Source: Dicyema japonicum
Lineage: Eukaryota > Animalia > Dicyemida
Direction: 5' to 3'
DNA length: 64,000 nucleotides
Assembly: GCA_011109175.1 (NCBI GenBank)
Contig: RDEW01000067.1
Location: 1 to 64,000 of the forward strand
Shown here: piece after piece, positions 4,917 to 48,900 of the stretch
Layout: each line of letters starts with the position of its first letter
Numbering within the stretch: the stretch's first letter is position 1
The notes under the pieces: generated by a model
What the model saw: the letters and a program-made list of their open reading frames with translations, nothing else
What the model was told of the DNA's origin: nothing
Database searches by the model: none
Position numbers and translations under genes: made by a program

Positions 4917-6610
4917 GAGGTTACAAATGGCAACAAAACTTTCATCTTTAGTTATGTCAGTTTCCATCATGAACTTGCATAGCGAATTTAAGCCACTACG
5001 CAATTGGCTACCTCACGCATATATACAATCTGTCCATTAACTATAATATATTCCTAAGATTTGGAAGAATTCTATCATCAGACCGATATTGAAGGCTGGG
5101 AAACCAGAGACAGAACCTGCATCCTACAGGCCTATTTCCGTTACCAGCACACTGTCAAAAATTATGGAGAAACTTGTATTATCAGTCATTATTCCGTATC
5201 TTCCGCGTCCTATATTTCAACATGGTTTCCTCCGCGGTAGGTCACCGCTACATACTTGGCAACTTTATCGCAGTTCATTGCCGACGGTTTAACACCCATC
5301 CTCCGCCTCACAAACGCACAATCTTGGTTTCTATTGACATCAACAAAGCCTTTGACACTGTTTCGAGGAAAATCTTGGTTGGAAAAATTTTTTCTACATA
5401 TTCGTCCGAATGTGAAATTATGGCTGGCCAACTTTTTGTCTGGAAGACGTGGAAGAGTAGTCAGTGGTGATCTCAGATCTAGATCCGATTACTACCGAAC
5501 GGGTACCCCAGGGGTCTCCACTTTCACCATCATTCTATTCACCTTTTCCTACACGACCTACCTAATGATGGAGACGAAGATTCCTGTTATTATCCTACGC
5601 AGACGACGTAGTCATTGCAACACGGAACCGGCTCGACTCAAGTCGCATCCCTTAAACTCAGACAAAATTGAACATTCTCCACGATTGGATTGCTGGCAAT
5701 CGACTAACGATTTCTGCAACCAAGTCTATCTGTTCCACATTCACGTCGGACCGTCGTTCCAAGGATGAACCGAGTCTTTTCATTGGTCCCACTAGGATTC
5801 CAGTGACAAAGTCCCCCATTGTCCTTGGAGTCAAGTACGACACCCTTCTCAAATTCAACTCCCACGCAAAGACATATCACCAGGGGCCTCCAGAAGTTAA
5901 CGTTATACGCGCCCTTGTTCGGAGGACCACGAGGAACATGGACTTTTCCGTTTTCTACACTCTACCAACAAACAATCGCGCCTGCCATTGAGTATGCCTC
6001 CGTTGCATGGAGATTCGGCTATCGGAGTCTTTGGTCCAAAGAATCAACTCGATATACCGGAAAACAATCAGTATGCTTTCCTCACGTAATGGATCAACAG
6101 TCGACCCACTACTCATGGAAGCTAAGATCCGTAGTCGTGGCTCCGGATTTCTTCGCCTCTGTGAGGAAGATGGAAATCCGCTTCGCCTAATCCTTCCCAT
6201 GGCAAGAGAAAACCGATTGGATAAGAAATTCCCCTCCCGATCGGATTCCTCTGCAAGACCGAGAGAAGGCTCTTCCGGAAAGTAGTGGGGACGATGGAGG
6301 ATCACAGACGTCGAATGGCACAAGTGATTGCGAGACTGGGATCACCTAACTGTCTGACTCTTTTGTCTTTCTTTCTCGGTGTTCCCGGGGTTTATTAAAA
6401 TAAATAAATAAATAGCGAATTTATTATTGTGTAGTCAAGAAACCAACTGATCACAAAGATCTTCAGATATGTCATCAATTATTCCGGCAACTGTGTTATC
6501 ATAGAGTGGTATTTGCAGTAATTGTTCAGCATTTTTGGTTCCATAATTTTTTGCGGAAAATTTGGGAATTAGCAAATTTCAGAATTTATTCAATAATTTT
6601 AAAATAGTTT
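4917..6610 (-). pseudogene. Buster-type (ZBED5/SCAND3-like) transposase remnant split by a LINE insertion
   Basis: 6424-6610 encodes AEQLLQIPLYDNTVAGIIDDISEDLCDQLVS. After removing 4991-6411 it reads LHNNKFAMQV.., followed by a frameshifted ETDITKD, matching the family motifs IPLSxNTVxRRI and FxxQxDExTD. Confidence 0.7.
4991..6411 (+). mobile_element. 5'-truncated Ingi/Vingi-like LINE (RT and 3' end, frameshifted)
   Basis: SYRPIS, QHGF, FNTHPPPHKRTILVSIDINKAFDTVS, YADD; (TAAA)n tail; 12-bp TSD ATAGCGAATTTA at 4979-4990 and 6412-6423. Confidence 0.9.
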
Positions 6611-6719: not shown

Positions 6720-7728
6720 AGCTACACTTAAAAGCCACGACGCGCGTGAGACCAGTGACTTCTCCAGTTGATCTCTGTTGCAATCGTAAGAGCCAACGAC
6801 GTCGATAATGTCGGCGGGGTCCAATTTAGATGGTTAGCTGTGTTATTTATTTAATAACCCCGAGAAGGGAAGAAAGGAGTAAACCAACTAATTAAGTGAT
6901 CCCGGTACACCTCAAAAGGATCGAGAGATCGGCAGGTAGATTCGTTAGACGTACCAATTTGGCTGTTAGGGAATTGATTTTGTACAAATTTGCTGTTCTT
7001 TGACGTGGAGAAGGCGTTCGACTGGTCTGTCATAGTTGACTCCAATACGCCCTTGCAGAGGGGTGATCTCACTGGAACTCTGAAGCTATTCTCCAATTCT
7101 CTGGAATAAGCGTGGTTTAGAGGTGCCATTTTAGTTTCTATTTTACGGGCATTTCAGCAGGGGTTAAGTCAAAACTTGTTTAATGAGTATCTCCCGTCCC
7201 TTCCTCGTCCAATTTAACTTTTTGAATTACATCGTACACAGGAATTACTTTTTGGAGACCAGATGTAGCGTGTCGGAGTATGTTGTGGATGCTATCATAT
7301 GCTGGCCAAAAGATGACCGTCTATGGGGTTCACAGGAAAGTTACCTAGGGTCACGTTTACCTCAAAGTTAGTTTACTGGAACAAATTGCTCTCATTATGT
7401 GAAGGTCTGCATAACAATCGGACGCTCTTAGAACATTTCGTCTGAAACGAGAAGCGTTAACCCAGTTTCCCAGTCTCTCCAAAATATTCTTTGTCAGCCA
7501 TTTTCAACATCCGTTGAAGATGTTTTTAATAGCCAATCGTAATATTTCCTAGAAAACTCAATAACATATAAATACAAGAAAATCTTTGAATTTTACATTA
7601 ACCAGAAGAGTTCTCTTATATATTTATTTTATAATAGGTATTATCAAAAAAGTTGCATGATATATTATTTTTTTATTTAACCAAAAGACCACGGTAAAAC
7701 CAAACTAATTATCACGTGATCCCGATGC
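6720..7728 (-). mobile_element. Decayed LINE 3' fragments (Vingi-like 3' ends at about 6850-6903 and 7670-7723)
   Basis: Reverse-complemented GGGATCAC..TAATTAG terminal motif followed by A-rich tails. Confidence 0.55.
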
Positions 7729-8215: not shown

Positions 8216-10156
8216 ATTCTAGATTTAATTATTTAAACAAAGAATATTAATTGCAAAAAATCTTGGTTTATTTTTTTATTGTATGTTGTGTAGATAAACG
8301 CGAAAGTACTTCGAAGATTCAAACTTGGAGTATTACTAATGAGTTTTGAATCACAAAGTAAAGCGAGTATAGATAAGCGTGATCTCCACGGAGAATAAAT
8401 GCGATTAAGCAAAGTGCGGTACAGAAACGAGAGACGAAAAGCTAGATTAAAGTCAAACCGTTACTAAACTTAGTAGACCTTGAATTCAGACCTTTTGAGA
8501 TGTAGAGCCATAGAATGGAATTACTTCGACTCTCTGATGACGTTTGCCAGTCACACGAGAAAGTGTTAACTAAGGGTCTTCGAAAATTGAACGTCCTAAA
8601 AGCCATCGTAAAGAAGAGCCCCTTCTCCTACTGCTTGTATCAGCAAAGTATATCTCCAAGTTATTGTGCGACGATTGAATATGCTGTTCTACCTGGAGAT
8701 TCGCCATTCCTTCTACGAGGGTGGAGCGTGTGAATTTTCTCAGACGGAAGATCATGATGCACACACAATCAGACAGTCTGCTTTCAGAGGAGGAAACGGT
8801 GAGAAATGGCCTGGGCTTCCTACGTATGTGCAAACCCATTCAGAGAGTGGTTCATGCGGAGGAATTCAGATCGGCAATAGAAAAATGCACTCCGATAGAA
8901 TTCCTCTGCAGAAATAAAAGAAGACACTACAGAAACGCTGTTGTTTCACTGGCGGAGCATTCGAAAAGAATTCGAGAGATGTTGAGGCTGGGATCACTTA
9001 ATTTAGCAAGTTAATTCTATCTTTCTTGGTGGTCTTGGAGTTTTAAAATAAATAAATATAAATGTATTTCAATTCCTTCACCAATTCACCAAACATACAA
9101 TGATCACATTTTTTTATCTTGTGGGTAGATACTTCGCCAGGAACGCCACTTGTGTGGATGGGTTCTCCACAGACCTTTAAATGGCGGCAACTCAGCCAGG
9201 ATCAGCCTCAGAAAGGGAGAGAAACCCTAAGAAAAAACACAAAATTCTCGGTGGACAGTTATTGTTGAACCACTCATTGTCGAAATATCAGAGGGTCATT
9301 GGAAGCAGATCACTAACTCCGATTAACCATATTGGATCGCTAATCGTGTAAAAGAAAATGATAACCAGATATGACTCAGCTTATTGATCGCATTTCCTCA
9401 CAACTCTCGATTTTCAGAGCTGTCAGACATATTTTTGTAGACTTCTTTGTAGCTTTCCTCTTTCCTCAATTGAAGAGTTCTAATAATAGAATTCTTCATC
9501 TGTGGACTTAAAAAAACAACTTTGTGGTTTAAAAAGACTCGTCGCCTCACAAGTAGATGTGTTTAACATTTGTTGAGAAGACAAGAAAGACAGACATGTT
9601 TAAGCCAGGTGGTAATTAACTATTTTGGGGACCTGCACACGTGATTCCTATCACCGATTCAATTAAAAATCTCATTTTAAAAATAAAATAAAAAAATAAA
9701 ATTTTGACCTCTTCTATGCAGGAACCCACTGATGTGGTTCCTTGAAATTACCAGCGATGTATTTACAAGTTACCGGGGTTTCAGATATTTTTTCAGTCGA
9801 ATATCTGATCAATTAACCTCTCGGAAAACAGGTCAATAATTATGCCTGCGTAAGAACTGACCCATTTTACTGAATAATAATTTTGCCTGCGTAAGAACTG
9901 ACGCAGTTTATGAATACCAGTTTATTGAATACTGAATACTAAGCGCTTAATCCTAACGAGAAGGGTATGGAAGTGGTAAACCAACAGTCATATCATCATG
10001 AAGATCAATATTAATGGAAATGGTAAACTAACAGCCATATCATCATTAAGATCAATTAGCAATCAAGAAAATAAATTACATTAAAATATGCAAAAAATCT
10101 TAAAATATGCGACCTTTGGAAATATAAATTAAACAAGACAGCGTATTTACTTTATT

Positions 10157-12017
10157 ATGTCGGAGTCTATTGACAGAGATGAAGATGGATTTGATGAGGA
10201 GACCCTAATTAAAATGTTGTCCCCAGTCCAGGCGCCAGAAGGAGGCCACGGATGGTTAATCGTGTGTATCTGCTCGCTTATTTCGTTTTCTACACTGGAT
10301 TAATTTGCTCGTTTGGATTAATAATATTAATACTCCTTAAATATTATTCAGTTAACCCAAAGGAGACTCACTTTTTTCTTCCAGCTGTACTATTTATCGC
10401 TGTCAACATAATTGGTAAACCAATTTGGTTTACTTTAGTTTTACCTTCAACTTTTCTTCTTAAATTTACCACACCAAAAGTTTTGCTGATAAGTTCGGGG
10501 TTTGTTTTGTCTATTTCGCTTATTTCAACATATTTCGTCGGTATATGTGAACTGTATTTTCTGACAATATCGATATTTCCAGGTATTTGTTTAATTCACA
10601 TAAGGAATTGGCTTTGGGATGGCCTTCGTCTCTTCCAGTGCTCAACTCAGTGTTTATTTTATTGAGAAACGACATATTGCCATCGCTGTTATTTCTGTTG
10701 CACGAGGAATCGGTGCAATTGTAATCCCAGTCATAATATATGTGATATCAAACAATTATACATTCAATGTGAGTATCACAATTATCGGATCTTTTACTTT
10801 TATCATCTCATTACTGGGATTTTTCATTAGTCCCCCCAGACTATCACATAAAGACGGATCTGATGTCAAAGAATACGTCTCTAAAATGGCCAAAGAATAC
10901 TGCCAAGACCATCAAAATGAAGAACAGAGAGGACAAGAAAATGCCAAGTCTAAAAATATTTTTTGGTTTTTCATCAGAAATGTATTAAAGAATAACACAA
11001 AGATTCATTTCCACCTGAAGGAACCGCTTGAAGGTGATGTTTATGAAAATATGGATGTCAATGAAATGTGGACGAATTTGTTTGTAAAATTACACGAAAA
11101 GAATAAATTTGACCAATCAATAGAAGAAGTAATGACTAAATGGCTAGAATGTGTATTATTGAATCACGTCAATCGAATAGATATGTTTTTGAGAGTAGCC
11201 GTGATATTATTGCTAAGAGAGCATCAGTAAATATTGAACAATGTTCTAGCTTTCTTAAAATACCAAAAATTCAAAAATCATTCAAAAAGCAACAAATTGT
11301 CCATATAAAAGTCAGTAACAAAAACAGCCGATAAACCGAATATGAAAAATATTTTCTTACTCATTTCATCTTCTTTTGTATTTCATTTAGTGAGCAGTGT
11401 TCCTTTAGTATACACTATAATTGACTACTTTAATTTTTGGAAATAAATAAATATAAATGCATTTTGTTTCCGGGATTTATCGGTGAGAATTTTTTGTGTT
11501 AATATATAGGAATTGGGTATATGATCGGGAATCTGTTTTCCGCCCTTTTGTTGATTAAGTTTAACTTTGAACCTTATCCGATCAAGTTCACATCGATGAT
11601 TGTGTCTTCTATGTCATATTTGGCTATCGCTTACTTTGCACTTAGTTTTACGCCAATTGTTTTTTCATGCGTTATTTTTGGAATATCTTTAGGTTATTTA
11701 CCGTTCACACAATTTTAGGTGTGATTGAAAATACATTGCAACTGATCGTTTTGGATTACACCGGAATGACTGATTTCACGTTAATATATTCGATAATAAT
11801 TGCAAGTAATGGAATCTCTATATTTGTTGGTCTATGCATGACAGGTTATATCATTAATTAAACAGGACCCACATTTGATCGGGAACTTTTAACATTTTTC
11901 GATATCTTATTAGTTTCGTGCGGGATTAGTTTGGCTTCTACTATAATATTTTCGCTGATATTTATTATTAAAAAGTGTTCACAAAGGAATAACCATATCA
12001 CTTCTGATGGGAGATGA
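10157..12017 (+). pseudogene. SLC16/monocarboxylate-transporter-like MFS protein, copy 1 (frameshifts and stops in this assembly)
   Basis: APEGGHGWLIV (MCT PDGGWGW motif), GIGFGMAFVSSSAQLSVYF, multiple TM segments, and micro-introns of 24, 22 and 27 nt. Confidence 0.75.
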
Positions 12018-12239
12018 TAACACGGCTAACTCTATTATTTGATTTAGTTTTAGAAATTTGGTTTTTTTCTTTTATTAATTTATATTTGTTATACTCTGGA
12101 TGGGTTTTTAGGACTGGATTAACTGTGATTACGGGACTATTTGTGGCTCAAGGATTCAAATGGGTAAGGTTTATAAACAATGAAAGATGTCACTTAGAGA
12201 GTCGATGCATTCAAATGCATATATTTTGATAATTTGGAG

Positions 12240-14292
12240 ATTATAGTACTGTTCGACCCCTGTTTGGGGTAACAAATACTCAAAAAATAATTTAAGTTAC
12301 TTAGCAGATCGCAGGCCTACATCCAGAAAGCCGCTATTTTCTCCTTTACTGTAACCCTCACTTGTCTCAGTAATTCTCTTAGTCTTGCCTCAAAATCCGT
12401 GACTTCCGGTGCAGTAGAAATATTCTTTCCATTATTCTGTTACACGGCGTAGTCGGGTAGTCTAAGAATATGTCCAAATAGTTGCCATCTCGATAGAATA
12501 ACGTCCATGCTAATTGGTGTAGATTTACATGAGCATATAGTTCTCGTTTGAGATTTTTCCTGGCCAAAAGATTCCAGTCAGTATGCGCAGTTGGCTTCTG
12601 TGGAAAGTATCTAGCCTCTCTAAATCGTTTTTGGAGGTTCCCAATGATCCGGAATTGTATATCAGTATTTGCTTGATAAACGTGTCGTATAGTCTGACAC
12701 GAGTTTCAGTTATACATTTCTCTTTCTTACCCTGATGTTGTAAATTTTTTTGAAGTATACGGTAGCTACTTTTCCTTCGACAAATATCCTCGGCATCACC
12801 TAGTAGTGAGCCGAAATTTATGCGCAGATCCCATTTATTTAAAATAGTTTCTGCTTGGAATAAAATTTGTCAAGTAGGATTTTCTGTACACACAGTCTAC
12901 ATCATCCGCGTATAACAATTCAATTATATCTTCGTATTTAGAACCAATTTCCTTTCTCAGCTCCCTGAGGGCAGCTTCGTGGTATATGATGAATAGAATT
13001 GGGGATAAAGAATCATCTTGTGGGGTTCCCATGTTGGTACTGAAACTCTTTGAGTGCTTAGTTTCTATTCTCACGGATAGATGAGTTTCAGAAAGTAATA
13101 GACTTATTAGTCATAACCAGTCTTCGTCAAGCAGTTCCTGTAGAATACCCATGAGTTATTCTCTATTGATGCTGTCAAAAGCCTTTGTTAGATCAATTCC
13201 TAGGATGTAGATAACTTTCCTGTAGTTTTGACATATTGGTGTAAGCCATCGATGACTCCACAAGATATCTGAGGGTAGACCTCCACTTTTAAACCCACTT
13301 TGACTTTGGGAAAGGTATTTTTCCACTGGCTCTCGTATACGGTTAAGCATTATGGTAGATAACGTATTTTTGATAGTTGACAGTGGAATAATAGGCCTTA
13401 ATCCATCTAGTGATCCCCATTTATTCCCAGGTTTTTGTATCGTAATTTAGACTCCATGTCCTAATGGAAGTGGACATTGAAGTTCCATCGACTCGTTTAA
13501 TATATCCGTGATTATATTCCCAACAATAACCGGACCATGTTTTAGTAACTGGCCCGGGATGCCATCATAGCCAGCTGAACGATTGCCTTATAGGTGTATG
13601 AATGCATTTGTTACTTCCTTCATTGTAATTTTGTTTGTAAGAGGTCTTGGATTTTTAATAAATTTAGGTATATTCACTCCAACTAGATTAAACTGTGCCT
13701 CGAAGTGTTTGGCAATATGGTTTGCTTTATCCTCTGGGTTTTGAAATAATGACCCGCGTTGTCGCAGATTTTCAGCGGCTTTTTCGTAGTTCCTCGTGTA
13801 AGTAATATAACAGCAAAAAACATTCGTCTTCCATACTGACAGTTTTCAATTTCAGTCGCCTTATCGTCCAAATATTTGTGGCAGAAGTCATTCGCTCGTT
13901 TTTATCAAATGTGATATTTGATTACATTTTCTCTTTAATGCACTTTTATTCGAATTTGAACTTTCCAGTTTCGAACCTATTTCCTTCTGCTGTTCCGACA
14001 ATTCTCTTATCACGGAGTCATGAATAATACGTCTATTCCGATCTTTTTCCTGGTATCCAACAGTCTCTGTCGTCGACAGATTTAAGATATCCAAGATCTT
14101 CCCAAGGTCAGTCGAAGGGTGCTACTGGTTTCAACACCCCGCAACCGTTTAGAGACATTTTGTTGGTATCTCTTTTGCAAAGTGTCAAAATTCAACAATT
14201 CCATATCCAAACGTCTATTTAGAGAGGTACTTTTCCTCTTTACTGGTTCAATTCCGAAGTATCGTTTAAGATTTAAGGAACTGGGAAACCCA
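12240..14292 (-). mobile_element. RTE-clade LINE fragment (RT and 3' region)
   Basis: SQSGF, GIDLTKAFDSINRE, GTPQDDSLSP, LLYADDVD, RVRLYDTFIKQILIYNS. Confidence 0.85.
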
Positions 14293-14847
14293 CTCAACTA
14301 AAAAATGGCCCATGCAGAGGAATTTCGGTCGGTTATAAAAAAAAGTGCACGCCGATAGAATTCCTATGCTTCAGGAGTGCGGTTAGGTCATCAGAAGTCC
14401 AGACGAAGAGAGTTCAAATGTTGTTGGAGGCTGGGATCACCTAATTAGTTAGCCTTGACCTATCTTTCTTGGTGGTCTTGGAGTTAAATAAATACAATAA
14501 AAATGGAATTACTTCGTACACGATACTTTTCTACTTTCTTAAGCCAAAATATTTTTGCATAGTCTAATTGTTGCCAATTCGACAAGACAGAGTATACATG
14601 ACATTTCCAAAGTACAAAAATCAATCTGAGGCTGTGTATGTCCACAATGTAGTCATTCACGAGACCGATAGAAGCAAGGTATGGTAACTTTCAAATACGT
14701 ATGATCTCATCTGTACTAAAAATAAATATAACTCATACCCCCATTATAAAAAAACGTTGGAATTCTTCACACAGGACACAAATGAAACTCTCAATGAAGA
14801 AGTCAAACTTTTTGAGAGTCAGCCGTTTACGAAGTCATCATGTACAT

Positions 14848-17800
14848 CAGGGTTGTCAAACTCATTTTTTATCGAGGGCCGAATTTTATAATAATTTCCC
14901 TTTGAGGGCCGCATTTATAATAATTTTTCATCAAAGAAAGATTATTTATTTTAATAAAAAACCAAAATTAATGGAAAACTAATTTTGTAATCACCATCTT
15001 CTAATCGTGCTTAGAGCAACTTCCGAGGTTTGACATCTTTTTTCGGATACAATTTTTGATATGTCGGGCTCTACTATTCGTGTAGTCCAGACTTTTATTA
15101 AAGCCGATAAATTTTCATTAGTGAGTCTTGTTTTTTAACAGTTTTTGTTAATTTCATAAATGAAAAAAGTTGTTTACACACATGTCGAACCAAACATAGC
15201 AATTATTTTTGTAGCAAAATTTTTAAAGTCTTTAAATTTTTCAGAAAGATGTGAAAACAAAGCAGGTATTCCAACCTCCAAATATTTAGCCTTTATTATA
15301 GAATCCGATTGGTTCTCCAACAATTCCATTTGTAGATTTNATAAATGAAAAAAGTTGTTTACACACACGTCGAACCAAACATGGCAATTATTTTTGTAGC
15401 AAAATTTTTAAAGTCTTTAAATTTTTCAGGAAGATGTGAAAAGAAAGCAGGTATTCCAACCTCCAAATATTTAGCCTTTAGTATAGAATCCGATTAGTTC
15501 TCCAACAATTCCATTTGTAAACTTTTATCTGCATTGGAAGCATTAAAAGCGAATGGTGCTGTGAATAATGAAAATTCTTGTTTAAAAGACGAGAAATCAT
15601 TAAATCTTTTATGAAATTCCTTTAACAACAAATCCAGTTGTCCTTCATTATTGGAAAAATTCATTACAGTATGTGCACCAACAGTACTCCTCAGTTCTTT
15701 ACATGTAGAAAAATGAACTAAATCTTCATTAAATAGCTGAGACTTCCATAATTTCATTTTCGAAATAAAACGCTTGTTTTTGCCCTGCAATTCCAAATTA
15801 AGGTCGTTCATATGTGCTGTAATATCAACTGCAAAGACCAAATTTTGGATCCAAGATTCACTTTTCATCTCGTCTGTGTTTTGGCCTTTCATTTCCATAA
15901 ATCAAATCCATAGTTGTGGAAGTTTAACAATGATATCTTTACTTGTAGTAGTATCGTGCATTGGTACAAGTTCGAGAAATTCTTCATAAATATTAAAATC
16001 TGAATCACATGCTCTAAAAAAGATTGTGCAATTCCAATAACGTCGACCGTTTAATCGATCGCAATTTAAGAANATTTTCGAAATAAAACGCTTGTTTTTG
16101 CCCTGCAATTCCAAATTAAGGTCGTTCATATGTGCTGTAATATCAACTGCAAAGACCAAATTTTGGATCCAAGATTCACTTTTCATCTCGTCTGTGTTTT
16201 GGCCTTTCATTTCCATAAATCAAATCCATAGTTGTAGAAGTTTAACAATGATATCTTTACTTGTAGTAGTATCGTGCATTGGTACAAGTTCGAGAAATTC
16301 TTCATAAATATTAAAATCTAAATCACATGCTCTAAAAAAGATTGTACAATTCCAATAACGTCGACCGTTTAATCGATCGCAATTTAAGAATATTCAAATT
16401 TAAACAATTCAGAATTTAATTGTTATTTCAAATGAAAAGACATTTCTTTGATTTGTTCGACAGCTGTGTTTCTGGTCAAAGAAATGTCTTTAAACAAATG
16501 AGCATTTTTTTGAATTGTGTTATTAATAAAATGATGAGGACAAAACATTAGTTAGCTGCCACTGCTTGGCTCAAACAGCCAGCGGCGTTCGCGGAAATCT
16601 CCAGTGATGAGGTGATCCGGTTTCCAAGACGTCCGAAAAACTCTAGTGCAGAGGGGGAGTAGAATCCGGAAGTCTCCATAGCAAGGGGAACAAATTGGAC
16701 ATTATCGGGAAGGTCGCCGTATTTTTCGAGTTTGGCCTTCTCCTCCTTGACGGCTGTAGAGCAGGCTCTTGAAGCGCACTCGTGAAGATTGTTCGGGGCG
16801 AACGTATCTGTACATGTCACGTCCCAAACAAGTGGTTTGCCGCCATCGAAGGGAAATATGGTCATCATGTCCGGTCGTTTCCCGTCACTTCTGCATAACC
16901 CGACCGGTTCAAGAATGGCCGAGTATCCAGAAGCATCAATAGCGCGCTTGACAATTTCATTCAGAGCCTTGTGCCTTGGAGATCTGCCAACTCTCCTCTT
17001 GGAGGCGTGAGGGTGCAGGCCATATCAGTCTATCAGGACACCACATCGGTACGGGTGAGGTACACATACTTTCAGTCCCAGCCCCAGAGAAATATCACTT
17101 CTAACGCATTCAATTTTGGAACAATTAAAGAGAAGTAATCGTCAACAAGACCACAGTTTGTTATTTCACATTTCGTTGTATTCAATTCAAGACCCACCTT
17201 GGACAACGCGGAGATGACTACTTCTAACTCCTGAAAGACCATCTCCGGGAGATCTCCTAAAACAGCGTCATCGAGGTACCAGATGTTGAGTGGATATCGA
17301 AAGAGCTTCGTAGTCCTCTCAATTACGAAGGAGAACAGCAATGGTCCGAGGTGTCGTCTTGTCGAACACCCGTGGACGATGGAACCATGAAATCCTCGTG
17401 CAATAGAGATGTAGGTTTTCCATGTGAATGATTGACCAGTTCAAATATATATGGACATTTTTTTTGCAGGCCTCCAGAATGCNGATGTTGAGTGGACATC
17501 GAAAGAGCTTCGTAGTCCTCTCAATTACGAAGGAGAACAGCAATGGTCCGAGGTGTCGTCTTGTTGAACACCCGAGGACGATGGAACCATGAAATCCTCG
17601 TGCATTAGAGATGTAGGTTTTCCATATGAATGATTGACCAGTTCAAATATATATGGACATTTTTTTTGCAGGCCTCCAGAATGCAGTCTCTTCTTAAATG
17701 GTTGAAAGAGTTCTTGATGTCCAGCTTTAACATAATGTGCCTTGTAAAGTCTTGAATACTGCGGTTTCTGAATGTCCTGACGGAGTGAACGGCTACCTCA

Positions 17801-39735: not shown

Positions 39736-40044
39736 GGCGCAGTGTGACAGTTTCCGGGCAAGAGGTTTGAAACTCGCTAGTTCGAATCCCGATACTGACA
39801 TACGGTTGAAGGTTCCATGCATCAATATGCTTTGGTTTGACGAGTGACGCCATCATAAGTGAACTTCACTGCGGAACCGGATTGTCTATAATGGACATAC
39901 ACCCAAGAAAAAGAAAAAAATGAAATGAAGAGCATTCCTTGATCCTCCCTTGATTAATAACTGTTCTTTGTTTAAATAAAGTGTGTGTTCTGCCTGAGGT
40001 GAACGATAACTGATATGGCCTCTTGGAAAGTGCGATTATTATTA
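39736..40044 (+). mobile_element. tRNA-derived SINE, copy 5, inserted at the 5' end of a LINE
   Basis: 12-bp TSD TGTGGTGGCGCT at 39724-39735 and 40045-40056, A/B boxes, core and (ATT)n tail. Confidence 0.9.
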
Positions 40045-42410
40045 TGTGGTGGCGCTCAGTGCAAGTTCTGTATGGAAGAGAACCGTTCAACTTTCCCTAC
40101 TCTTCTGCGATTTTCAGAAGGGTGGCATACCAATTCCCCCGTTTCCTCTTTACTACTTCTGTCTGGTGATGTAGAACCTAATCCGGGATCCAACTGCACA
40201 CTGACTATTCTACAATTAAATGTAAATGGAATCCGCAATAAAGTGTTGAATTACGATCCCTTTCATCCCATTTGAAAGTGGACATTGCCCTCATTCAAGA
40301 ATCTCTATAAAGTCCCCAACACCTTGTTTTCCTGGATATTGTGTACTTCGCAAAAACCAAACAAGAAGTCTCGGAGGAAGATTATTGATTATCGTTAAGG
40401 ATGGACTTAAATTTACGGATGTCACCCATTTCGTATCTTATCTCTGCGAAGGGGATTTTATTCTGGAACAGATTTCTACTGAAGTTTTTTTTTCTCAGAC
40501 GAGATGTTTTACACTGTGTAATGTCTAGATCCCGCCTCAGGAGTCATGTACTACTTCATACATCCCCAACCTATTGAGACTGTGTGGATTAAAAGATCTG
40601 CTACTATGCGGAGATTTAAACACACAATCAGCCGACAATCGCGGAGAGTACATCCTATCTATACTCGACGAATTTATTATCCTCAATAATCCGGATTCCC
40701 ATACGAGGACCCCAATCCGAAGAAAGGATAGTCCAACTCCCAGGATTTATCATTATACACTCCCTCCCTTGCTGGATACCTTTCATGGGATGTTCGTTAT
40801 GGTTTTACAAGCGACCATAACCCAATTATGTTAAAACTGAAAAGATCTATTTGTCTGCCAAGATGTTCTACAAAGTTCAAGGACTAATCGAAGGAAAATT
40901 GGTTTAAATTCAGCGCGTATGTGGATAATTGTCTATCGGGACTCATTGTGGAAGACTTCCCTGTTGACAAGGCAGCCATGATGTTAACTTCAGTTATTCG
41001 AAAAGCCGACAGAATGTTCATCCCAATATCCTCCTACAGAAAATTCAATACGAAACTATTTTCGGGCATCCTGGAACTTATCAAGAAACGGGATGCTTTG
41101 AAGAAAACCGGAATGCAATCAGATGGCTCTATATCGTCCATACGCTTTCTAAATCGCAGAATTTCCCTACTAATTTGTGATAAACACATACACAAATGGA
41201 GTCGGCTTGTTGGTCGACTATGCCACAAGAAATCGTGTGGAAACTTCTGGAAGACACTAAAGAGTATCAACAGCCTTACAAAGGAAGATGACGGTGGAGT
41301 GGAAACCGTTACCCTTGTCCCGGAACATGTACGGAAACTCGCTAGTAACCTAAGTGTCAATCTCTCGATCTCTGCATATCAAGCGAGGTGGTCCACAACA
41401 GTCGACATATACGACGTTCTTCACTACCTACGATGTGGAAAGGACTATTAAATTTCTACGACCAACCCTGTGACCCCGATGGTGTCTGTGCTATCCACCT
41501 TAAACACCTAGGACCTCAGGCTCATATTGTGTTATCAAGACTATAAAACCAGTCTATAAATTCTCATACAATACTATACCAAACATATGGAAGACCTCAT
41601 TGATTACTCCAATCCTCAAATTTGGAAAATCAAAAGACATTCCATCCTTATACCGCCCTGTCTCCATAACTTGCGCCGTGTCAAAAGTGTTGGAGAAGAT
41701 TATACTAATCCATGAATTTGCTGTCTGTGTCTGCATCCAAGTCTCAGTTCAGCCTATTTACTACGGACAGAAGATGTAAAGGTGGACTTGATATATTCCT
41801 CGGAAACATTCCCATCCCTTATACACGAATCCAGAAGATTTTTGGAGTAACTTTCGACTCTCTGATGACGTTCGCCAGTCACACGGAGGAAGTGTTAACC
41901 AAGGGTTTTCAAAAATGGAACGTCCTAAAAACCATAGTAAAGAAGAGCCCCTTCCCTCCTACTGCCTGTATCAGCAAAGTATATCTCCAAGTTATTGTGC
42001 GACGATTGAATATACTTGTTCTACCTGGAGATTCGCCATTCCTTCTACGAGGGTGGAGCGTGTGAATTCTCTCAGACGGAAGATCATGATGCACATACAA
42101 TCAGACTCTACATCCGTTCCCAGTCTGCTTTCAGAGGAGGCGACGGTGAGAAATGGCCTGGGCTTCCTACGTATGTGCAAACCCATTCAGAGAGTGGTTC
42201 ATGCGGAGGAATTCAGATCGGCAATAAAAAAGTGCACTCCGATAGAATTCCTCTGCAGAAATAAAAGAAGACACTTCAGAAACGCTGTTGTTTCACTGGC
42301 GGAGCATTCAAAGAGAATTCGAGAGATGTTGGCACTGGGATCACTTAATTTAGCAAGTTAATTCCTTCTTTTTTGGTGGTCTTGAAGTTTTAAATAAATA
42401 AATATAAATG
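40045..42410 (+). mobile_element. Ingi/Vingi-like LINE: 2A-like leader, APE, RT with internal deletion, 3' end
   Basis: LLLLSGDVEPNPG, ILQLNVNGIRNK, IQES, LLCGDLN, HLKHLG..YRPVSITC..SKVLEKIIL. It then jumps at about 41710 to the post-YADD region, so the RT core is missing. Ends LGSLNLAS* followed by (TAAA)n. Confidence 0.9.
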
Positions 42411-43436
42411 TATTTCAATTCCTTCACCAATTCACCAAACATACAATGATCACATTTTTTTATCTTGTGGGTAGATACTTCGCCAGGAACGCCACTTGTG
42501 TGGATGGGTTCTCCACAGACCTTTAAATGGCGGCAACTCAGCCAGGATCAGCCTCAGAAAGGGAGAGAAACCCTAAGAAAAAACACAAAATCTCGGTGGA
42601 CAGTTATTGTTGAACCACTCACCGTCGAAATATCAGGGGGTCAGATCACTAACTCCGATTAACCATATTGGATCGCTAATCGTGTAAAAGAAAATGATAA
42701 CAGAGGTAACTCAGCTTATTGAGCGCATTTCCTCACAACTCTCGATTTTCAGAGCTGTCAGACATATTTTTGTAGAATTCTTTGTAGCTTTCCTCTTCCC
42801 TCAATTGAAGAGTTCTAATAATAGAAATTTTCATCTGTGGACTTAAAAAAACAACTTTGTGGTTTAAAAAGACTCGTCGCCTCACGATTGTGATGTGTTT
42901 AACATTCGTTGAGAAGACAAGAAAGACAGACATGTTTAAGCCAGGTGATAATTAACTATTTTGGGGATCTGTTCACGTGATTCCTATCGCCGATTCAATT
43001 TAAAAATCTCATTTTAAATATAAAATAAAAAAATAAAATTTTGACCTCTTCTATGTAGGAACCAACCGACGTGGTCACTTGAATTTACCAGCGATGAATT
43101 TACAGGTTACCGGGGTTTCAGAAGTCTTTTCAGTCGAATATCTGATCAATTAACCTCTCGGGAAACAGGTCAATAATTATGCCTGCGTAAGAACTGACCC
43201 AGTTAATGAATACCAGTTTACTGAATACTGAATACTAAGCGCTTAATCCTAACGAGAAGGGTATGGAAGTGGTAAACCAACAGCCATATCATCATGAAGA
43301 TCAATATTAATGGAAATGGTAAACAACAGCCATATCATCATTAAGATCAATTCAATAGCAATCAAATATGCAAAAAATCTTAAAATATGCGACCTTTGGA
43401 AATATAAATTAAACAAGACAGCGTATTTACTTTATT

Positions 43437-45279
43437 ATGTCGGAGTCTATTGACAGAGATGAAGATGGATTTGATGAGGAGACCCTAATTAAAATGTTGT
43501 CCCCAGTCCAGGCGCCAGAAGGAGGCTGTGGATGGTTGATCGTGTGTATCTGCTCGCTTATTTCGTTTTTCTACACTGGATTAATTTGCTCGTTTGGAAG
43601 AATAATGATAATATTCGTTAAAGATTATCCATTAATCCAAAGAGAACTTTTTTCTTCCAGCTGTATTATTCTCGCTGTGAACATAATTGGTAAACCAATT
43701 TGGTTTACTTTAGTTTTACCTTCAACTATTCTTCTTAAATTTACCACACCAAAAGTTTTGCTGATAAGTTCGGGGTTGTTTTGTCTATTTCGCTTATTTC
43801 AACATATTTCGTCGGTAAATATGAACTGTATTTTCTGACAATATCGATAATTCCAGGTATTTGTTTAATTCACATTAGGAATTGGCTTTGGGATGGCTTT
43901 CGTCTCTTCCAGTGCTCAACTCAGTGTTTATTTTATTGAGAAACAACATATTGCCATCGCTGTTATTTCTGTTGCACGAGGAATCGGTGCAATTGTAATC
44001 CCAGTCATAGTACATGTGATATACATTAAATTCAATGTGAGTATCGCAATTATCGGTTCTTTCACTTTATCATCTCATTACTGGGATTATTCATTAGTCC
44101 CCCCAGACTATCACATAAAGACGGATCTGATGTCAAAGAATACGCCTCTAAAATGGCCAAAGAATACTGCCAAGACCATCAAAATGAAGAACAGAGAGGA
44201 CAAGAAAATGCCAAGTCTAAAAATATTTTTTGGTTTTTCATCAGAAATGTATTAAAGAATAACACAAAGATTCATTTCCACCTGAAGGAACCGCTTGAAG
44301 GTGATGTTTATGAAAATATGGATGTCAATGAAATGTGGACGAATTTGTTTGTAAAATTACACGAAAAGAATAAATTTGACCAATCCATAGAAAAAGTAAT
44401 GACTAAATGGCTAGAATGTGTATTATTGAATCCCGTCAATCGAATGGATATGTTTTTGGAGAGTAGCCGTGATATTATTGCTAAGAGAGCATCAGTAAAT
44501 ATTGACAATGTTCTAGCTTTCTTAAAATACCAAAAATTCAAAAATCATTCAAAAAGCAAAAATTGTCCATAAAAGTCAGTAACAAAAACAACCGATATAT
44601 CGAATAAGATAAATATTTTCTTACTCGTTTTATCTTCTTCTATATTTCATTTTGTGAGCAGTATTCCTTTACTATCTTAATCATTATACAGATATGTAAT
44701 AATTATTTATCGTCATTCATCGGTTGGAATTTTTGGTTTTAATATATAGGAGTTGGGGGTATGGTCGGGCAGTTGTTTTCCGCCCTTTTGTTGATTAAGT
44801 TTAACTTTGAACCTTATCCGATCAAGTTCACATCGATGGTTGTGTCTTCTATGTCATATTTGGCTATCGCTTACTTTGTAGATAATTTTACGGCATACAT
44901 ATTATATGCGTTATTTTTGGAATATCTTTAGGTTATTTACCGTCCATACAATTTTAGGTGTGATTGAAAATACATTCCAACTGATCGTTTTGGATTACAC
45001 CGGAATGACTAATTTCACGTTAATATATTCGATAATAATTGCAAGTAATGGAATTTCTACCTTTGTTGGTCTATGCGTGACAGGTACTATCATTAATTAA
45101 ACAGGACCCACATTTGTTCGGGAACTTTAACATTTTTCAATATCTTATTAGTTTCGTGCGGGATTAGTTTGGCTTCTACTATAATATTTTCGCTGATATT
45201 TATTATTAAAAAGTGTTCACAAAGGAATAACCATATCACTTCTGAGGGAGATGATAACACGGCTAACTCTATTATTTGA
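43437..45279 (+). pseudogene. SLC16/MCT-like transporter, copy 2 (disrupted)
   Basis: APEGGCGWLIV; colinear paralog of 10157-12017 with the same micro-intron positions but different indels. Confidence 0.75.
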
Positions 45280-45479
45280 TTTAGTTTTAGAATTTGGTTT
45301 TTTCCTTTTATTAATTACATATTTCATATTTGTTATACTATGTCTGAGTTTTTAGGACTGGATTAACTGTGATTACGGGACTATTTGTGGCTCAAGGATT
45401 CAAATGGGTAAGGTTTATAAACAATGAAAGATGTCACTTAGAGAGTCGATGCATTCAAATGCATATATTTTGATAATTT

Positions 45480-48400
45480 GGAGATTATAGTACTGTTCGA
45501 CCCCTGTTTGGGGTAACAAATACTCAAAAAATAATTTAAGTTACTTAGGCATCCAGAAAACCGCTATTTTCTCCTTCACTGTAACCCTCACTTGTCTCAG
45601 TAATTCTCTTAGTATTTCTTGGTCTGTCTCAAAATTCGTGACTTCCGGCCCAGTAGAAATATTCTTCCATTATTCTGTTACACGGCTTAGTCAGGTCAGT
45701 CTAAGAATATGTCCAAATAGTTGCCATCTAGATAGAATAACGTCCATGCTAGTTGGTGTAGATTTACATAGAGCATATAGTTTCTTCGTTTGAGATTTTT
45801 CTCGGCCAAAAGATTCCAGTCAGTATGCGCAGTTGGCTTCTGTGGAATGTATCTAAGCCTCTCTAAATCGTTTTTGGAGGTTCCCAATGATCCGGAATTG
45901 TATATCAGTATTTGCTTGATAAACGTGTCGTATAGTCTGACACGAGTTTCAGTTATACATTTCTCTTTCTTACCCTGATGTTGTAAATTTTTTTGAAGTA
46001 TACGGTGAGAGCGGAGCTTGGCTAAACGCCATCCCCAATGGAGCTTTGGGCACTTTTCTGGATGATGAATGCGTTAGAACTGGTATCTCTCTGCGGCTGG
46101 ACTAAAAGGATGTGTACCTCACCTGTGCCGATGTGGCATCCTGATAGACTGCTATGGCCTGCACCCTCTTGCCCGCAGGGGGGGGCGCTGGCAGATCCCC
46201 AAGGCACAAGGCTCTGAATGAAATTGTCAGGCGAGCTATGGATGCTGCTGGATACTCGGCCATTCTTGAACCGGTCGGGTTATGCAGAAGTGACGGGAAA
46301 CGACCGGACGGGATGACCATATTTCCATTTGAGGCCGGGAAACCACTGGTTTGGGATGTGACATGTACAGACACGTTCGCCCAGAAAAATCTTCACGAGA
46401 GTGCTACAAGGGCCTGTTCAGCATCCGTAAAGGCGGAGAAGGCCAAACTCGTTAAATACGCCGACCTTCCCGATGATGTCAAATTTGTTCCCCTTGCTAT
46501 GGAGACTTCCGGATCCTACTCCCCCTCTACACTCGAGTTTTTCGGACGTCTTGGAAACCGGATCACCTCATGCACTGGAGATCTCCGCGAACGCCGCTGG
46601 CTATTTGAGCGAATTTCGCTCGCAATTTTGAGAGGGAACAGCCACGCGGTGAGGGCGGCAACTACCTGACTTCTATTGTTTAAATTAATAAATAAATTTA
46701 AATTTCCCAAAAAAAAAAAGTATACGGTAGCCACTTTTTCCTTCGACAAATATCCTCGGCATCACCTAGTAGTGAGCCGAAATTTATGCACAGATCCCAT
46801 TTATTTAAAATAGTTTCTGCTTGGAATAAAATTTGGTCAAGTAGGATTTTCTGTACACACAGTCTACATCATTCGCGTATAACAATTCAATTATATCTTC
46901 GTATTTAGAACCCATTTCCTTTCTCAGCTCCCTGAGGGCAGCTTCGTGGTATATGATGAATATAATTGGGGATAAGGAATCACCTTGTGGGGTTCTCATA
47001 TTGGTACTTAAACTCTTTGAATGCTTAGTTTCTATTATCACGGATAGATAGTTTCAGAAAGTAATAGACTTATTAGTTTTAGGCAGTCAGCGTCAAGCAG
47101 TTCCTGTAGAATACCCATGAGTTATTCTCTATTGATGCTGTCAAAAGCCTTTGTTAGATCAATTCCTAGGATGTAGATAACTTTCCTGTAGTTTTGACAT
47201 ATTGGTGAAAGCCATCGATGACTCCACAAGATATCTGAGGTAGACCTTCCACTTTTAAACCCACTTTGACTTTGGGAAAGGTATTTTTTCACTGGCTCTC
47301 GTATACGGTTAAGCATTATGGTAGATAACGTATTTTTGATAGTTGACAGTGGAATAATAGGCCTTAATCCATCTAGTGATCCCCATTTATTCCCAGGTTT
47401 TTGTATCGGAATTAAGACTCCATGTCCTAAAAGAAGTGACAGTGAAGTTCCATTGACTCGTTTAATATATCCGTGATTATTTTCCCAACAATAACCGGAC
47501 CATGTTTTAGTAACTGGCCCGGGATGCCATCATAGCCAGCTGAACGATTGCCTTATAGGTGTATGAATGCATTTGTTATTTCCTTCATTGTAATTTTGTT
47601 TGTAAGAGGTCTTGGATTTCCAATAAATTTAGGTATATTCACCCCAACTAGATTAAACTGTGCCTCGAAATGTTTGGCAATATGGTTTGCTTTATTCTCT
47701 GGGTTTTGAAATAATGACCCGCGTTGTCGCAGATTTTCAGCGGCTTTTTCGTAGTTCCTCGTGTAAGTAATTTAACAGCACAAAACATTCGTCTTCCATA
47801 CTGACAGATTTCAATTTCAGTCGCCTTATCGTCCAAATATTTGTGGCAGAAGTCATTCGCTCGTTTTTATCAAATGTGATATTTGATTAAATTTTCTCTC
47901 TAATGCACTTTTATTCGGATTTGTACTTTCCAGTTTCGAACCTATTTCCTTCTGCTGTTCCGACAATTCTCTTATCACGGAGTCATGAATAATACGTCTA
48001 TTCCGGTCTTTTTCCTGGTATCCAACAGTCTCTGTCGCCGACAGTTTTAAGATATCCAAGATCTTCCAAGGTCAGTCGAAGGGTGCTACTGGTTTCAACA
48101 CCCCGCAACCGTTTAGAGACATTTTGTTGGTATCTCTTTTTCCAAGTGTCAAAATTTAACAATTCCATATCCAAACGTCTATAAAAGAGGTACTTTTCCT
48201 CTTTACTGGTTCAATTCCGAAGTATCGTTTAAGTTTTAATCTGGCAACTGTTAATTTGTGGTCACTGTCAGCTATCGTTCCTCCAAAACTCCTAGAGTCG
48301 GACAACAGTCTCTTTAAAGAGGTTGGGCAGATAATATAATCTATTTGGTTATAAATGTACGTGTTGCCGCCGTCTTTGGACCTTCTTGTGCCAACCCAGG

Positions 48401-48593
48401 TGGTTTTGCGCTTTGCAGGGTGTTCAAACGTGGTACTGCATAGATACAGATTTGATGAATTACAAAAATCAACGAGTGTCCAGGGAGATTTCTTGGAATC
48501 CTGTTCCATTTTTCGCATGTAGATAACCTCTTTTGCTTTGTTATGTTTTGGAATGAGATGGCTTTTCCGTTGGGGGAAATGTAAAAATATCAT
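45480..48593 (-). mobile_element. RTE-clade LINE (APE C-terminus, RT, 3' end), interrupted by a CRE insertion
   Basis: YNQIDYII..SDHKL (APE), SQSGFKSGRST, IDLTKAFDS, PQGDSLSP. Paralog of 12240-14292 that extends further 5'. Confidence 0.88.
46007..46719 (+). mobile_element. 5'-truncated CRE-like element with poly(A) tail and TSD
   Basis: TSD (AA)GTATACGGT at 45996-46006 and 46718-46728, A11 tail, intact 171-aa frame RH..DGKRPDG..LVWDVT. The paralogous site near 12757 is empty. Confidence 0.93.
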
Positions 48594-48900
48594 TTTTTCA
48601 TAAAATTACGAACTGTCTGAGGACTAACATGAGTTCCATTAACATCTTTAAGATTGTTGGCAAATTTCACAGCAATAAAATTAGGATCATTAGACCTTTC
48701 ATTTTCAATAATTTCCAGATCACTTTCATTCAAACAGCCGGACGCCCAGATCCTTCGTTTCTGGCAACAATAATTTTTGATCACTCTGGAAGTAGAATCC
48801 AGGGATCTTCCCGTAGTACTACAAATTTCACGGTTAGTTTTTCCAAGACAATAAAGTGCTAAATTTCTCCTTTTTCAGTTGGTGTCAAATGGCAAACCAT
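48594..48900 (-). mobile_element. Tc1-like transposase N-terminal (HTH) fragment
   Basis: MVCHLTPTEKGEI.ALYCLGKTNREI..SRVIKNY..VSPQTVRN. Confidence 0.6.

What the first reader, a model, noticed from the sequence alone, without database searches (positions are those of the whole stretch)
8514..14516. LINE-mediated 6-kb duplication of an intron-containing transporter gene with a 15-bp TSD
The block starts inside a Vingi-like LINE with microhomology (TTCG) to the target. It runs through that LINE's tail, 1.1 kb of upstream DNA, the whole MCT gene and an antisense RTE, then switches at about 14292 to a different-subfamily LINE 3' end with a TAAA tail. A 15-bp direct repeat flanks the block. These are hallmarks of target-primed reverse transcription with a template switch onto the 41.9-48.2 kb locus. 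Yet all visible micro-introns are retained, so the template was unspliced read-through RNA or genomic DNA. This would duplicate genes together with promoter and introns without leaving a processed-pseudogene signature.
Basis: partly seen in the sequence, partly recalled or inferred. Interest (0 to 1): 0.85.

Follow-up and report, generated by a model that had tools for sequence, protein, structure and literature searches.

The report
LINE-capped local duplicate of transporter locus
A 5.7-kb stretch with an intron-containing transporter (pseudo)gene was copied 33 kb upstream, and the copy has the hallmarks of a LINE insertion; the kept introns and short distance suggest the template was chromosomal DNA, not spliced RNA.

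Summary
Window 8529-14276 is a same-strand copy of 41856-48239 (4.45% substitutions, 44 indels). It is followed by a 225-bp 3' end of a different-subfamily LINE with a TAAA-type tail (14277-14501). An exact 15-bp direct repeat flanks the whole (8514-8528 and 14502-14516; 0 of 100 shuffles gave two copies).

Short-read contigs bridge the left junction and the 14276/14277 switch without mismatch. The switch lies at 14276/14277, not about 14292. Five GT..AG micro-introns (21-27 nt) are kept in both copies. Both copies carry frameshifts, so they look like pseudogenes.

In the source, an antisense LINE reading frame runs uninterrupted across 48239. A LINE tail therefore never sat there, which rules out simple read-through into a downstream tail.

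I rank three mechanisms:
- Aborted target-primed reverse transcription completed by copying nearby chromosomal DNA: about 0.4.
- Break repair of a pre-existing LINE off the paralogous LINE, with run-on synthesis: about 0.25.
- Unspliced read-through RNA: about 0.2.

No empty-site allele could be tested. This is a new variant of known LINE-associated templated insertions. Two unchecked notes of this scan describe similar architecture elsewhere in this genome.

The parts
8514..8528 (+). Left copy of the 15-bp target-site duplication AATGGAATTACTTCG. Its last 4 nt (TTCG) are shared with the source at 41852-41855.
8529..9064 (+). Copy of the 3' 536 bp of the source LINE (B 41856-42410), including its TAAA-repeat tail.
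9065..10156 (+). Copy of the 1.1-kb spacer between the source LINE tail and the transporter start codon (B 42411-43436). It contains a 200-bp run identical to B.
10157..12017 (+). MFS / monocarboxylate-transporter-like gene copy, ATG to TGA. It has at least one frameshift (a 1-nt deletion near 10286).
10415..10438 (+). Micro-intron 1, 24 nt, GT..AG, retained (B 43690-43713).
10583..10604 (+). Micro-intron 2, 22 nt, GT..AG, retained (B 43857-43878). Removing it restores ...ISIFPG|IGFGMAF...
11483..11509 (+). Micro-intron 3, 27 nt, GT..AG, retained (B 44723-44749).
11693..11718 (+). Micro-intron 4, 26 nt, GT..AG, retained (B 44932-44957).
11845..11865 (+). Micro-intron 5, 21 nt, GT..AG, retained (B 45084-45104).
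12764..14276 (-). Copy of the 3' part of an antisense non-LTR retrotransposon (RT domain and linker). It is cut just after the end of the endonuclease domain (B 46718-48239). The lower boundary is approximate.
14277..14501 (+). 225-bp 3' end of a LINE of another subfamily ('LINE-Y') with the tail TAAATAAATACAATAAA. It joins the block with 1-2 nt of microhomology and no filler.
14502..14516 (+). Right copy of the 15-bp target-site duplication.
41856..48239 (+). Source locus B. The LINE continues upstream to about 40015 and the antisense LINE continues downstream to at least 48605.
46007..46717 (+). B-only poly(A)-tailed retroelement flanked by the duplication GTATACGGT. It is absent from A, so it inserted after the copy was made.
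48159..48605 (-). Open frame of the antisense LINE endonuclease C-terminus (...SDHKLTVARL...). It runs uninterrupted across breakpoint 48239 in B.

Best explanation
Proposed sequence of events (one composite event):
1. A LINE of subfamily Y nicked the site ...CATAG|AATGGAATTACTTCG|TACACG... and began target-primed reverse transcription on its own RNA tail. This accounts for the 225-bp LINE-Y end, the TAAA tail and the 15-bp staggered cut.
2. Reverse transcription aborted after 225 nt.
3. The broken chromosome was completed by copying about 5.7 kb of chromosomal DNA lying 33 kb downstream on the same strand (41856-48239). Either the cDNA 3' end or the reciprocal 3' overhang annealed there by microhomology and was extended by a polymerase, as in MMBIR or templated insertion.
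4. The new strand was joined with 1-2 nt of microhomology at the LINE-Y end and 4 nt (TTCG) at the target overhang.

Shown: the anatomy, the direction B to A, the junction microhomologies, the intron retention and the family-typical TSD size.
Inferred: that it was a single event, and that the second template was DNA.
For: - TSD plus LINE tail: an exact 15-bp repeat. A related LINE in the same window (4991-6413) has a 12-bp TSD.
- The left end of the copied block abuts the last base of the left TSD with 4-nt microhomology. This is the usual way 5'-truncated LINE insertions are sealed (PMC11702581).
- The right end abuts the LINE-Y fragment with no filler.
- Five sense-strand micro-introns are kept. 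The block also passes the source LINE's own tail and the gene's end. Known LINE-1/mRNA chimeras typically show splicing (PMC13174262).
- Source and copy are 33.3 kb apart, in cis and in direct orientation. For a genome of about 67 Mb, a random retro-insertion lands that close about once in 1000.
- In B the antisense LINE frame is continuous across 48239, so no LINE tail ever sat there.
- Junction-spanning contigs support the structure.
Against: - The block's left end falls inside a LINE of the same broad family as LINE-Y. A DNA-patch model does not predict this; I estimate about 10-20% by chance, given the source LINE sits there. The rivals predict it.
- A 5.7-kb templated tract is far longer than the reported L1-associated templated insertions.
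- No empty-site or intermediate allele was seen or could be searched for.
- The organism and genome size are inferred, not known, so the proximity argument is only semi-quantitative.
- Some read variants match neither A nor B, so an unseen third copy could be the true source.
Confidence: 0.4

Rival explanations
1. Two events. First, an ordinary 5'-truncated LINE-Y insertion of about 555 bp created the 15-bp TSD. Later, a double-strand break or gap inside it was repaired from the similar LINE 33 kb downstream. Strand invasion occurred in LINE homology. Synthesis ran on through the donor's tail and about 5.2 kb of flank. The end was then rejoined non-homologously to the remaining 225 bp of LINE-Y.
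For: - It explains without coincidence why the block starts inside a LINE and stops at a LINE fragment that keeps its own tail and TSD.
- Intron retention and cis proximity are both expected.
- A and B clearly exchange sequence: there are six identical runs of at least 120 bp against 0.65 expected.
- Repair of a break in a LINE by gene conversion with endogenous LINEs is documented (Tremblay et al. 2000; known here only by its title in the reference list of PMC7407515).
Against: - LINE-Y is only 77-83% like the donor LINE, with 17-18-bp indels, where both can be compared. That is a poor substrate for invasion.
- A is already 97% B-like at 8629-8852, and 8529-8628 is not significantly more diverged than the block average. 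Almost all of the recipient's left arm would therefore have to be erased while its first base was preserved.
- It needs two independent events.
Confidence: 0.25
2. RNA-level 3'-transduction-like chimera. Reverse transcription started on a LINE-Y RNA. After 225 nt it jumped onto an unspliced read-through transcript that began in or upstream of the source LINE and ran through the transporter gene into the antisense LINE. It was 5'-truncated at 41856 and sealed by TTCG microhomology.
For: - The architecture (LINE 3' part + own tail + downstream flank + terminal tail + TSD) is that of a classical 3' transduction.
- The copied strand is the sense strand of both the source LINE and the gene, as an RNA template requires.
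- Template switching of LINE reverse transcriptases onto other RNAs is well documented (PMC13174262, PMC2104539). L1-mediated insertion of unspliced intronic or intergenic transcripts is known (PMC5110952).
- A nascent, chromatin-bound transcript could account for the proximity.
Against: - All five 21-27-nt sense introns are retained.
- The transcript would have to ignore the LINE's own 3' end and the gene's terminator.
- There is no poly(A) or other RNA 3'-end mark at 14276.
- A landing site 33 kb from the source is very improbable for a diffusible RNP.
- The source LINE is now a 2.4-kb wreck with no demonstrated promoter.
- No RNA run was available.
Confidence: 0.2
3. Trans-mobilised read-through RNA from an unseen third copy, or a lost allele of B, that carried a 225-bp LINE-Y fragment at the position equivalent to 48239. 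This would be ordinary retrotransposition of an RNA ending in a LINE tail.
For: Some contig variants match neither A nor B (for example at 10716, 10718 and 10888). A further paralogue or allele therefore exists in the sequenced samples.
Against: - B itself never had a LINE tail at 48239.
- Only two copies of the gene are in the window.
- Intron retention argues against any RNA route.
- The odd variants may simply be alleles; heterozygosity of 1.24% is reported for Dicyema japonicum (PMC6736024), if that is the organism.
Confidence: 0.07
4. Assembly artefact or chance repeat.
For: The two copies are about 95% alike, which can confuse assemblers. The read support may come from the same sample as the assembly.
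Against: - Contigs from short reads cross 8528/8529 and 14276/14277 without mismatch.
- A-specific and B-specific variants occur at similar depth.
- The 15-bp repeat is far beyond chance.
- A misjoin would not create a TSD next to a LINE tail.
Confidence: 0.03

Closest known systems
[quoted passage not shown]
   Same: Both have a TPRT-type insertion (TSD, element 3' end) with extra non-element DNA copied from the same chromosomal neighbourhood, and microhomology at the 5' junction.
   Different: Those cases are somatic or experimental human L1 events with short patches or tandem duplications. This one is a fixed germline event in an invertebrate. It involves a non-poly(A) LINE, a 5.7-kb dispersed patch from 33 kb away, and a whole intron-bearing gene.
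LINE-1 3' transduction, including orphan transductions and class-1 templated sequence insertion polymorphisms (PMC5110952)
   Same: Both have the order LINE 3' part, own tail, downstream flank, terminal tail, TSD, and both contain unspliced genomic sequence.
   Different: The terminal tail here is a 225-bp fragment of another LINE subfamily, not a poly(A) added at a downstream signal. Five sense introns survive. The source is 33 kb away.
Chimeric retrocopies made by RT template switching, such as U6/L1, mRNA/L1 and the Magnaporthe tripartite chimeras (PMC13174262, PMC2104539)
   Same: Both have a LINE 3' fragment fused head-to-tail to a copy of another template inside one TSD, with little or no microhomology at the switch.
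   Different: Known partners are small RNAs or spliced mRNA pieces of tens to hundreds of bases. Here the partner is 5.7 kb, colinear with the genome, and includes intergenic DNA and introns.
Coupled homologous/non-homologous repair of a break in a LINE using an ectopic LINE (Tremblay, Jasin and Chartrand 2000; title seen in the reference list of PMC7407515), and MMBIR (PMC7407515)
   Same: Both involve a cis-proximal donor, run-on copying of donor flank and a microhomology end join. Both leave introns in place.
   Different: That route needs a pre-existing LINE and sufficient homology. Here donor and recipient tails are only about 80% alike and no recipient-type left arm is visible.

Membership tests
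TPRT-type LINE insertion | Target-site duplication of family-typical length directly flanking the insert | tested here: met
   The 15-bp repeat is exact and occurs twice only. A related LINE at 4991-6413 has a 12-bp TSD.
TPRT-type LINE insertion | LINE 3' end with its terminal repeat abutting the downstream TSD copy | tested here: met
   14277-14501 shares the conserved 3' motifs CTGGGATCAC and TTGGTGGTCTTGGAGT and a TAAA-type tail with three other LINE ends.
TPRT-type LINE insertion | An empty (unoccupied) site in another allele or species | not testable with these tools
   No genome of this organism or its relatives is reachable. The contigs shown gave no empty-site form, but the right flank was outside the laid stretch. 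The empty-site 26-mer is absent from metagenome contigs, which is uninformative.
3' transduction (read-through RNA) | Source element followed by the same downstream flank, colinear with the daughter | tested here: met
   The LINE tail/flank junction is identical in A (9064/9065) and B (42410/42411), and A is colinear with B to 48239.
3' transduction (read-through RNA) | The transduced segment ends at a transcript 3' end (a polyadenylation site or a LINE tail present in the source) | tested here: not met
   There is no poly(A) at 14276. In B the antisense LINE frame is continuous across 48239, so no tail was there.
3' transduction (read-through RNA) | An RNA intermediate (splicing of sense introns, or transcripts spanning the segment) | tested here: not met
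   Five sense GT..AG introns are retained. No RNA run was available.
RT template-switch chimera | Two templates fused in the same orientation inside one TSD, LINE part 3'-most | tested here: met
RT template-switch chimera | The second template is an RNA | tested here: inconclusive
   The sense strand was copied, which is compatible with RNA. Introns, intergenic DNA and cis proximity argue for DNA.
   Only a weak Exo_endo_phos_2 hit (E 0.018) was found, plus a 2A-like GDVEPNPG motif just upstream of the APE start. The motif is reported for Ingi, L1Tc, CR1, L2 and Rex1 elements (PMC3708506). It is compatible with the label but not diagnostic.
   RVT_1 hits (E 1.6e-8 and 8e-6) and an APE C-terminal SDH motif show a non-LTR element. 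The clade was not determined.
SLC16 monocarboxylate transporter | Significant match to MCT/SLC16 over the MFS fold | tested here: inconclusive
   MFS_1 scored E 1.8e-7, below Pfam's cut-off. The best solved-structure hits are MCT8 and MCT10, but at E 0.15-0.3. Atlas neighbours are MFS proteins. It is an MFS transporter; MCT-like is likely but not proven.

The most novel reading that the evidence does not exclude
In this genome, aborted LINE integrations are routinely completed by long-tract copying of nearby chromosomal DNA. LINE endonuclease nicks would then act as a recurrent engine of local, intron- and promoter-preserving segmental duplication. This gene-duplication route would leave a LINE tail and a TSD but no processed-pseudogene signature. 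Two unchecked notes of this scan (s1-354995, s1-319539) describe the same architecture elsewhere in the genome.
Probability: 0.2. Interest if true: 0.8.

Novelty: new variant of a known kind. Interest (0 to 1): 0.55.

Why it matters
Retro-duplication is normally thought to yield intronless, promoterless copies, while DNA-level duplication leaves no transposon hallmarks. This block combines both. It carries the scars of a LINE integration (tail, 15-bp TSD, microhomology-sealed 5' end). It also holds a colinear 5.7-kb piece of chromosome with upstream DNA, a complete gene and all its introns.

If LINE nicks can seed kilobase-scale local copying in the germline, part of the segmental duplication in repeat-rich small genomes could be LINE-initiated. 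Such copies would be missed by retrocopy screens that look for intron loss.

The single case here made what appear to be two pseudogenes, so its direct functional impact is probably nil. Its value is mechanistic.

Tried and rejected
- Extended homology between the 15-nt overhang and the source beyond TTCG. The source site scores no better than about 6% of the 454 TTCG sites in the window, so it is not significant.
- A sharp change of A-B divergence near 8628 as a sign of a leftover recipient LINE. The first 100 bp hold 10 differences against 8 in the next 350. The whole block is patchy and the substitution count is within Poisson range of the 4.45% mean. Inconclusive.
- Polarity of A/B differences with LINE-Y as outgroup. 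The counts are 9 to 4 sites, or about 6 to 4 events, which is symmetric. There is no sign that A's LINE part comes from another element.
- Filler or second template at 14277-14290. Only chance 9-10-mers were found elsewhere, and the letters are LINE-derived.
- A LINE tail downstream of 48239 in B, or a cryptic splice joining 48239 to one. None exists, there is no GT donor at the site, and the frame is continuous.
- A TSD for the source LINE. None was found.
- Other transporter paralogues in the window. None beyond A and B.
- Homologues of the large exon in the 5.8-billion-protein collection. No hit, so no related loci could be fetched.
- Rfam and tRNA scans of the window. Nothing found.
- Automatic intron finding by dynamic programming. 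It was too permissive, so introns were set by hand from GT..AG ends and frame restoration.
- Empty-site 26-mer in metagenome contigs. No match, which is uninformative.
- Read laying could take only 6,000 letters. The 14501/14502 junction and any read skipping the whole block were therefore outside the test.
Full report
**What is there**

A self-comparison of the window finds one large direct repeat. Window 8516/8529-14276 ('A') matches 41843/41856-48239 ('B') on the same strand, 33.3 kb downstream. The match is three colinear pieces of 92.6-96.3% identity. Over 5,614 aligned columns there are 250 substitutions (4.45%) and 44 indel events.

B holds an extra 711 bp (46007-46717). It ends in A11 and is flanked by the duplication GTATACGGT. 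It is a poly(A) retroelement that entered B after the copy was made, and a second copy lies at 16566-17112.

The 15-mer AATGGAATTACTTCG occurs exactly twice, at 8514-8528 and 14502-14516. Chance expectation is 0.02, and 0 of 100 shuffles gave two copies. The sequence differs on both outer and inner sides of the repeat, so it is exactly 15 bp.

**Anatomy of the block**

- 8529-9064 copies the last 536 bp of a decayed 2.4-kb LINE (B about 40015-42410), including its TAAA-repeat tail.
- That LINE has an endonuclease start (LNVNGIRNK) preceded by a 2A-like GDVEPNPG motif, and a weak Exo_endo_phos_2 match.
- 9065-10156 copies the spacer between the LINE tail and the gene.
- 10157-12017 is a transporter gene. 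It matches MFS_1 at E 1.8e-7. Its best solved-structure relatives are MCT8 and MCT10, only at E 0.15-0.3.
- About 12764-14276 is the 3' part of an antisense non-LTR element (RVT_1 E 1.6e-8).
- 14277-14501 is the 3' end of a LINE of the same broad family but another subfamily ('LINE-Y'). It is 77-83% identical to the source LINE tail, with 17-18-bp indels. It shares the conserved end motifs and ends TAAATAAATACAATAAA directly against the right repeat.

**The junctions**

Left junction: B homology starts right after the repeat, and the repeat's last four bases (TTCG) are also in B. Further similarity of the repeat to B is not significant (p about 0.06).

Right junction: B homology ends at 14276. 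The next letters, AGGAACTGGGAAACC, align to the homologous position of a related LINE at about 6.2 kb. The LINE-Y part therefore starts at 14277, with 1-2 nt of ambiguity and no filler.

**Direction of copying**

A is the copy. Only A is bounded by the repeat. In B, the LINE continues 1.8 kb further upstream. The antisense LINE's endonuclease frame (...SDHKLTVARL...) runs open from 48605 to 48159, straight across 48239.

That continuity also shows that no LINE tail ever sat at 48239 in B. Simple read-through into a downstream tail is therefore excluded for this source.

**Is it real?**

Logan contigs of four public runs were laid on 8440-14439. Three runs are from one sample and one is from another; organism names are coded.
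- Contigs of 233 and 368 nt cover 8440-8554 with no mismatch and extend further left.
- A 114-nt contig covers 14216-14329 with no mismatch.
- A-specific and B-specific variants appear at similar depth.

The third junction (14501/14502) and reads that would skip the whole block lay outside the 6,000-letter limit. No empty-site form was seen among the rows shown, but this is not evidence of absence. The runs may derive from the sample that was assembled.

**Introns**

Five GT..AG micro-introns of 24, 22, 27, 26 and 21 nt were placed by hand. Removing them restores long open frames: about 290 codons across introns 1-2 and about 170 codons across introns 3-5. It also restores transporter-like motifs such as ...ISIFPG|IGFGMAF... 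All five are present at the same places in both copies.

Both copies nevertheless carry frameshifts, at least one in A and at least four in B, several of them in homopolymer runs. They are pseudogenes unless the assembly has indel errors.

Introns of this size, a repeat-rich sequence, and runs in which this locus is about 1000x deep inside 2.2 Gb of contigs fit a dicyemid mesozoan sequenced together with its host. Dicyema japonicum has a 67.5-Mb genome, 49% repeats and a mean intron of 38 bp (PMC6736024). This identification is an inference, not a result.

**Mechanism**

The TSD, the LINE tail, a family-typical TSD size and a microhomology-sealed 5' junction are the signature of target-primed reverse transcription. 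A related LINE at 4991-6413 has a 12-bp TSD. The question is what filled the 5.7 kb between the 225-nt LINE-Y cDNA and the other side of the staggered break.

(a) An unspliced read-through RNA. This is the classical 3'-transduction layout, and the copied strand is the sense strand. However, five sense introns survive, the transcript must ignore the LINE's own end and the gene's end, and there is no RNA 3'-end mark at the switch. A diffusible RNP landing 33 kb from its source is about a 1-in-1000 event in a 67-Mb genome. Known LINE-1/mRNA chimeras characteristically show splicing (PMC13174262). A nascent chromatin-bound transcript would rescue the proximity but not the introns.

(b) Chromosomal DNA. 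After abortive reverse transcription, one of the two 3' ends anneals by microhomology to the nearby locus, is extended, and is joined back. This predicts the introns, the intergenic DNA, the cis proximity and the short microhomologies. [quoted passage not shown] It does not predict that the block should start inside a LINE, and the tract is unusually long.

(c) Two steps. An ordinary LINE-Y insertion of about 555 bp is later broken and repaired off the paralogous LINE, with run-on synthesis and end joining. This predicts the LINE at the left end, the introns and the proximity. A and B demonstrably exchange sequence: six identical runs of at least 120 bp against 0.65 expected. However, LINE-Y and the donor are only about 80% alike where they can be compared. 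No recipient-type left arm is visible: 8629-8852 is 97% B-like, and 8529-8628 is within the block's normal range.

Polarising A/B differences with LINE-Y as outgroup gives a symmetric split. That is what a plain copy followed by independent decay would give.

I put (b) at about 0.4, (c) at about 0.25, (a) at about 0.2, an unseen third-copy source at about 0.07 and artefact at about 0.03.

**Comparison with what is known**

The event works like three things. One is LINE-1-associated templated insertions and duplications (PMC11702581). Another is 3' transductions and class-1 templated sequence insertions (PMC5110952). The third is reverse-transcriptase template-switch chimeras (PMC13174262, PMC2104539).

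It differs from all of them in four ways. A non-poly(A) LINE tail caps the block. The tract is 5.7 kb long and colinear with the genome. A whole gene is included with its upstream DNA and five introns. The source is local.

It is best filed as a new variant of a known kind.

**Earlier findings of this scan**

Earlier first-reader notes on other DNA of the same genome describe similar things:
- '3' transduction capped by a second LINE tail: source and daughter in one window' (s1-354995).
- 'Mucin gene duplication bounded exactly by a LINE 3' tail' (s1-319539).
- 'Recurrent patching of retroelement junctions with nearby templates' (s1-305201).

Only their titles were available and none was checked. 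They are leads for the census proposed under next steps, not support. Readers who see one window at a time can only ever find local source-daughter pairs.

**Verdict**

Interest is moderate (0.55). It is a clean, well-bounded example that would become important if the pattern proves recurrent.

Noticed in passing
window 40165-40188: A 2A-like 'ribosome-skipping' motif (GDVEPNPG, followed by S instead of P) lies immediately upstream of the endonuclease start of the source LINE. This is the position reported for Ingi, L1Tc and some CR1 and L2 elements (PMC3708506).
   Followed up: partly
window 46007-46717 and 16566-17112 (minus strand): A poly(A)-tailed retroelement of about 0.55-0.7 kb is present in two copies that are 89% alike. 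The copy in B has a 9-bp TSD (GTATACGGT) and post-dates the duplication. A poly(A)-type element is therefore active alongside the TAAA-tailed LINEs.
   Followed up: partly
window 4991-6413: A 5'-truncated LINE of the same 3'-motif family has a clean 12-bp TSD, ATAGCGAATTTA. Another LINE tail on the minus strand lies at about 6845-6905.
   Followed up: partly
window 8529-14276 versus 41856-48239: Differences between the two copies are strongly clustered. There are six identical runs of 120-241 bp, next to 200-bp bins of only 86-90% identity. This suggests repeated gene conversion between paralogues 33 kb apart. At several A/B-differing sites (for example 9825, 9988, 10258, 10453) the public-run contigs show only the B letter. 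The patches may therefore be polymorphic, or the assembly may differ from that sample.
   Followed up: partly
window 10686-10940 and elsewhere in the block: Contigs from two different samples carry variants that match neither A nor B (10716 C>G, 10718 A>T, 10751 A>G, 10888 G>A). They point to a third paralogue or a divergent allele.
   Followed up: no
window 8440-14439 (read laying depth): Single-copy parts of this locus are about 1000x deep in a run whose contigs total 2.2 Gb in 28 million pieces. This is as expected for a small genome sequenced together with a much larger, thinly covered one. With the 21-27-nt introns, it suggests a dicyemid-like parasite plus host. Earlier notes of this scan called the genome cephalopod-like.
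   Followed up: no
window 15144-15519, 15756-16394, 17282-17684, 22793-23273: Four two-unit tandem duplications with periods of about 185-191, 318, 202 and 241 bp at 95-99% identity lie just downstream of the insertion site.
   Followed up: no
window 11428-11464: Inside the A copy of the transporter gene, a short stretch (AAATAAATAAATATAAATGCATTT) resembles the LINE tail plus its flank (86% to 42381-42415). The B copy is very different here, with a 17-bp gap and the lowest identity of the block.
   Followed up: no
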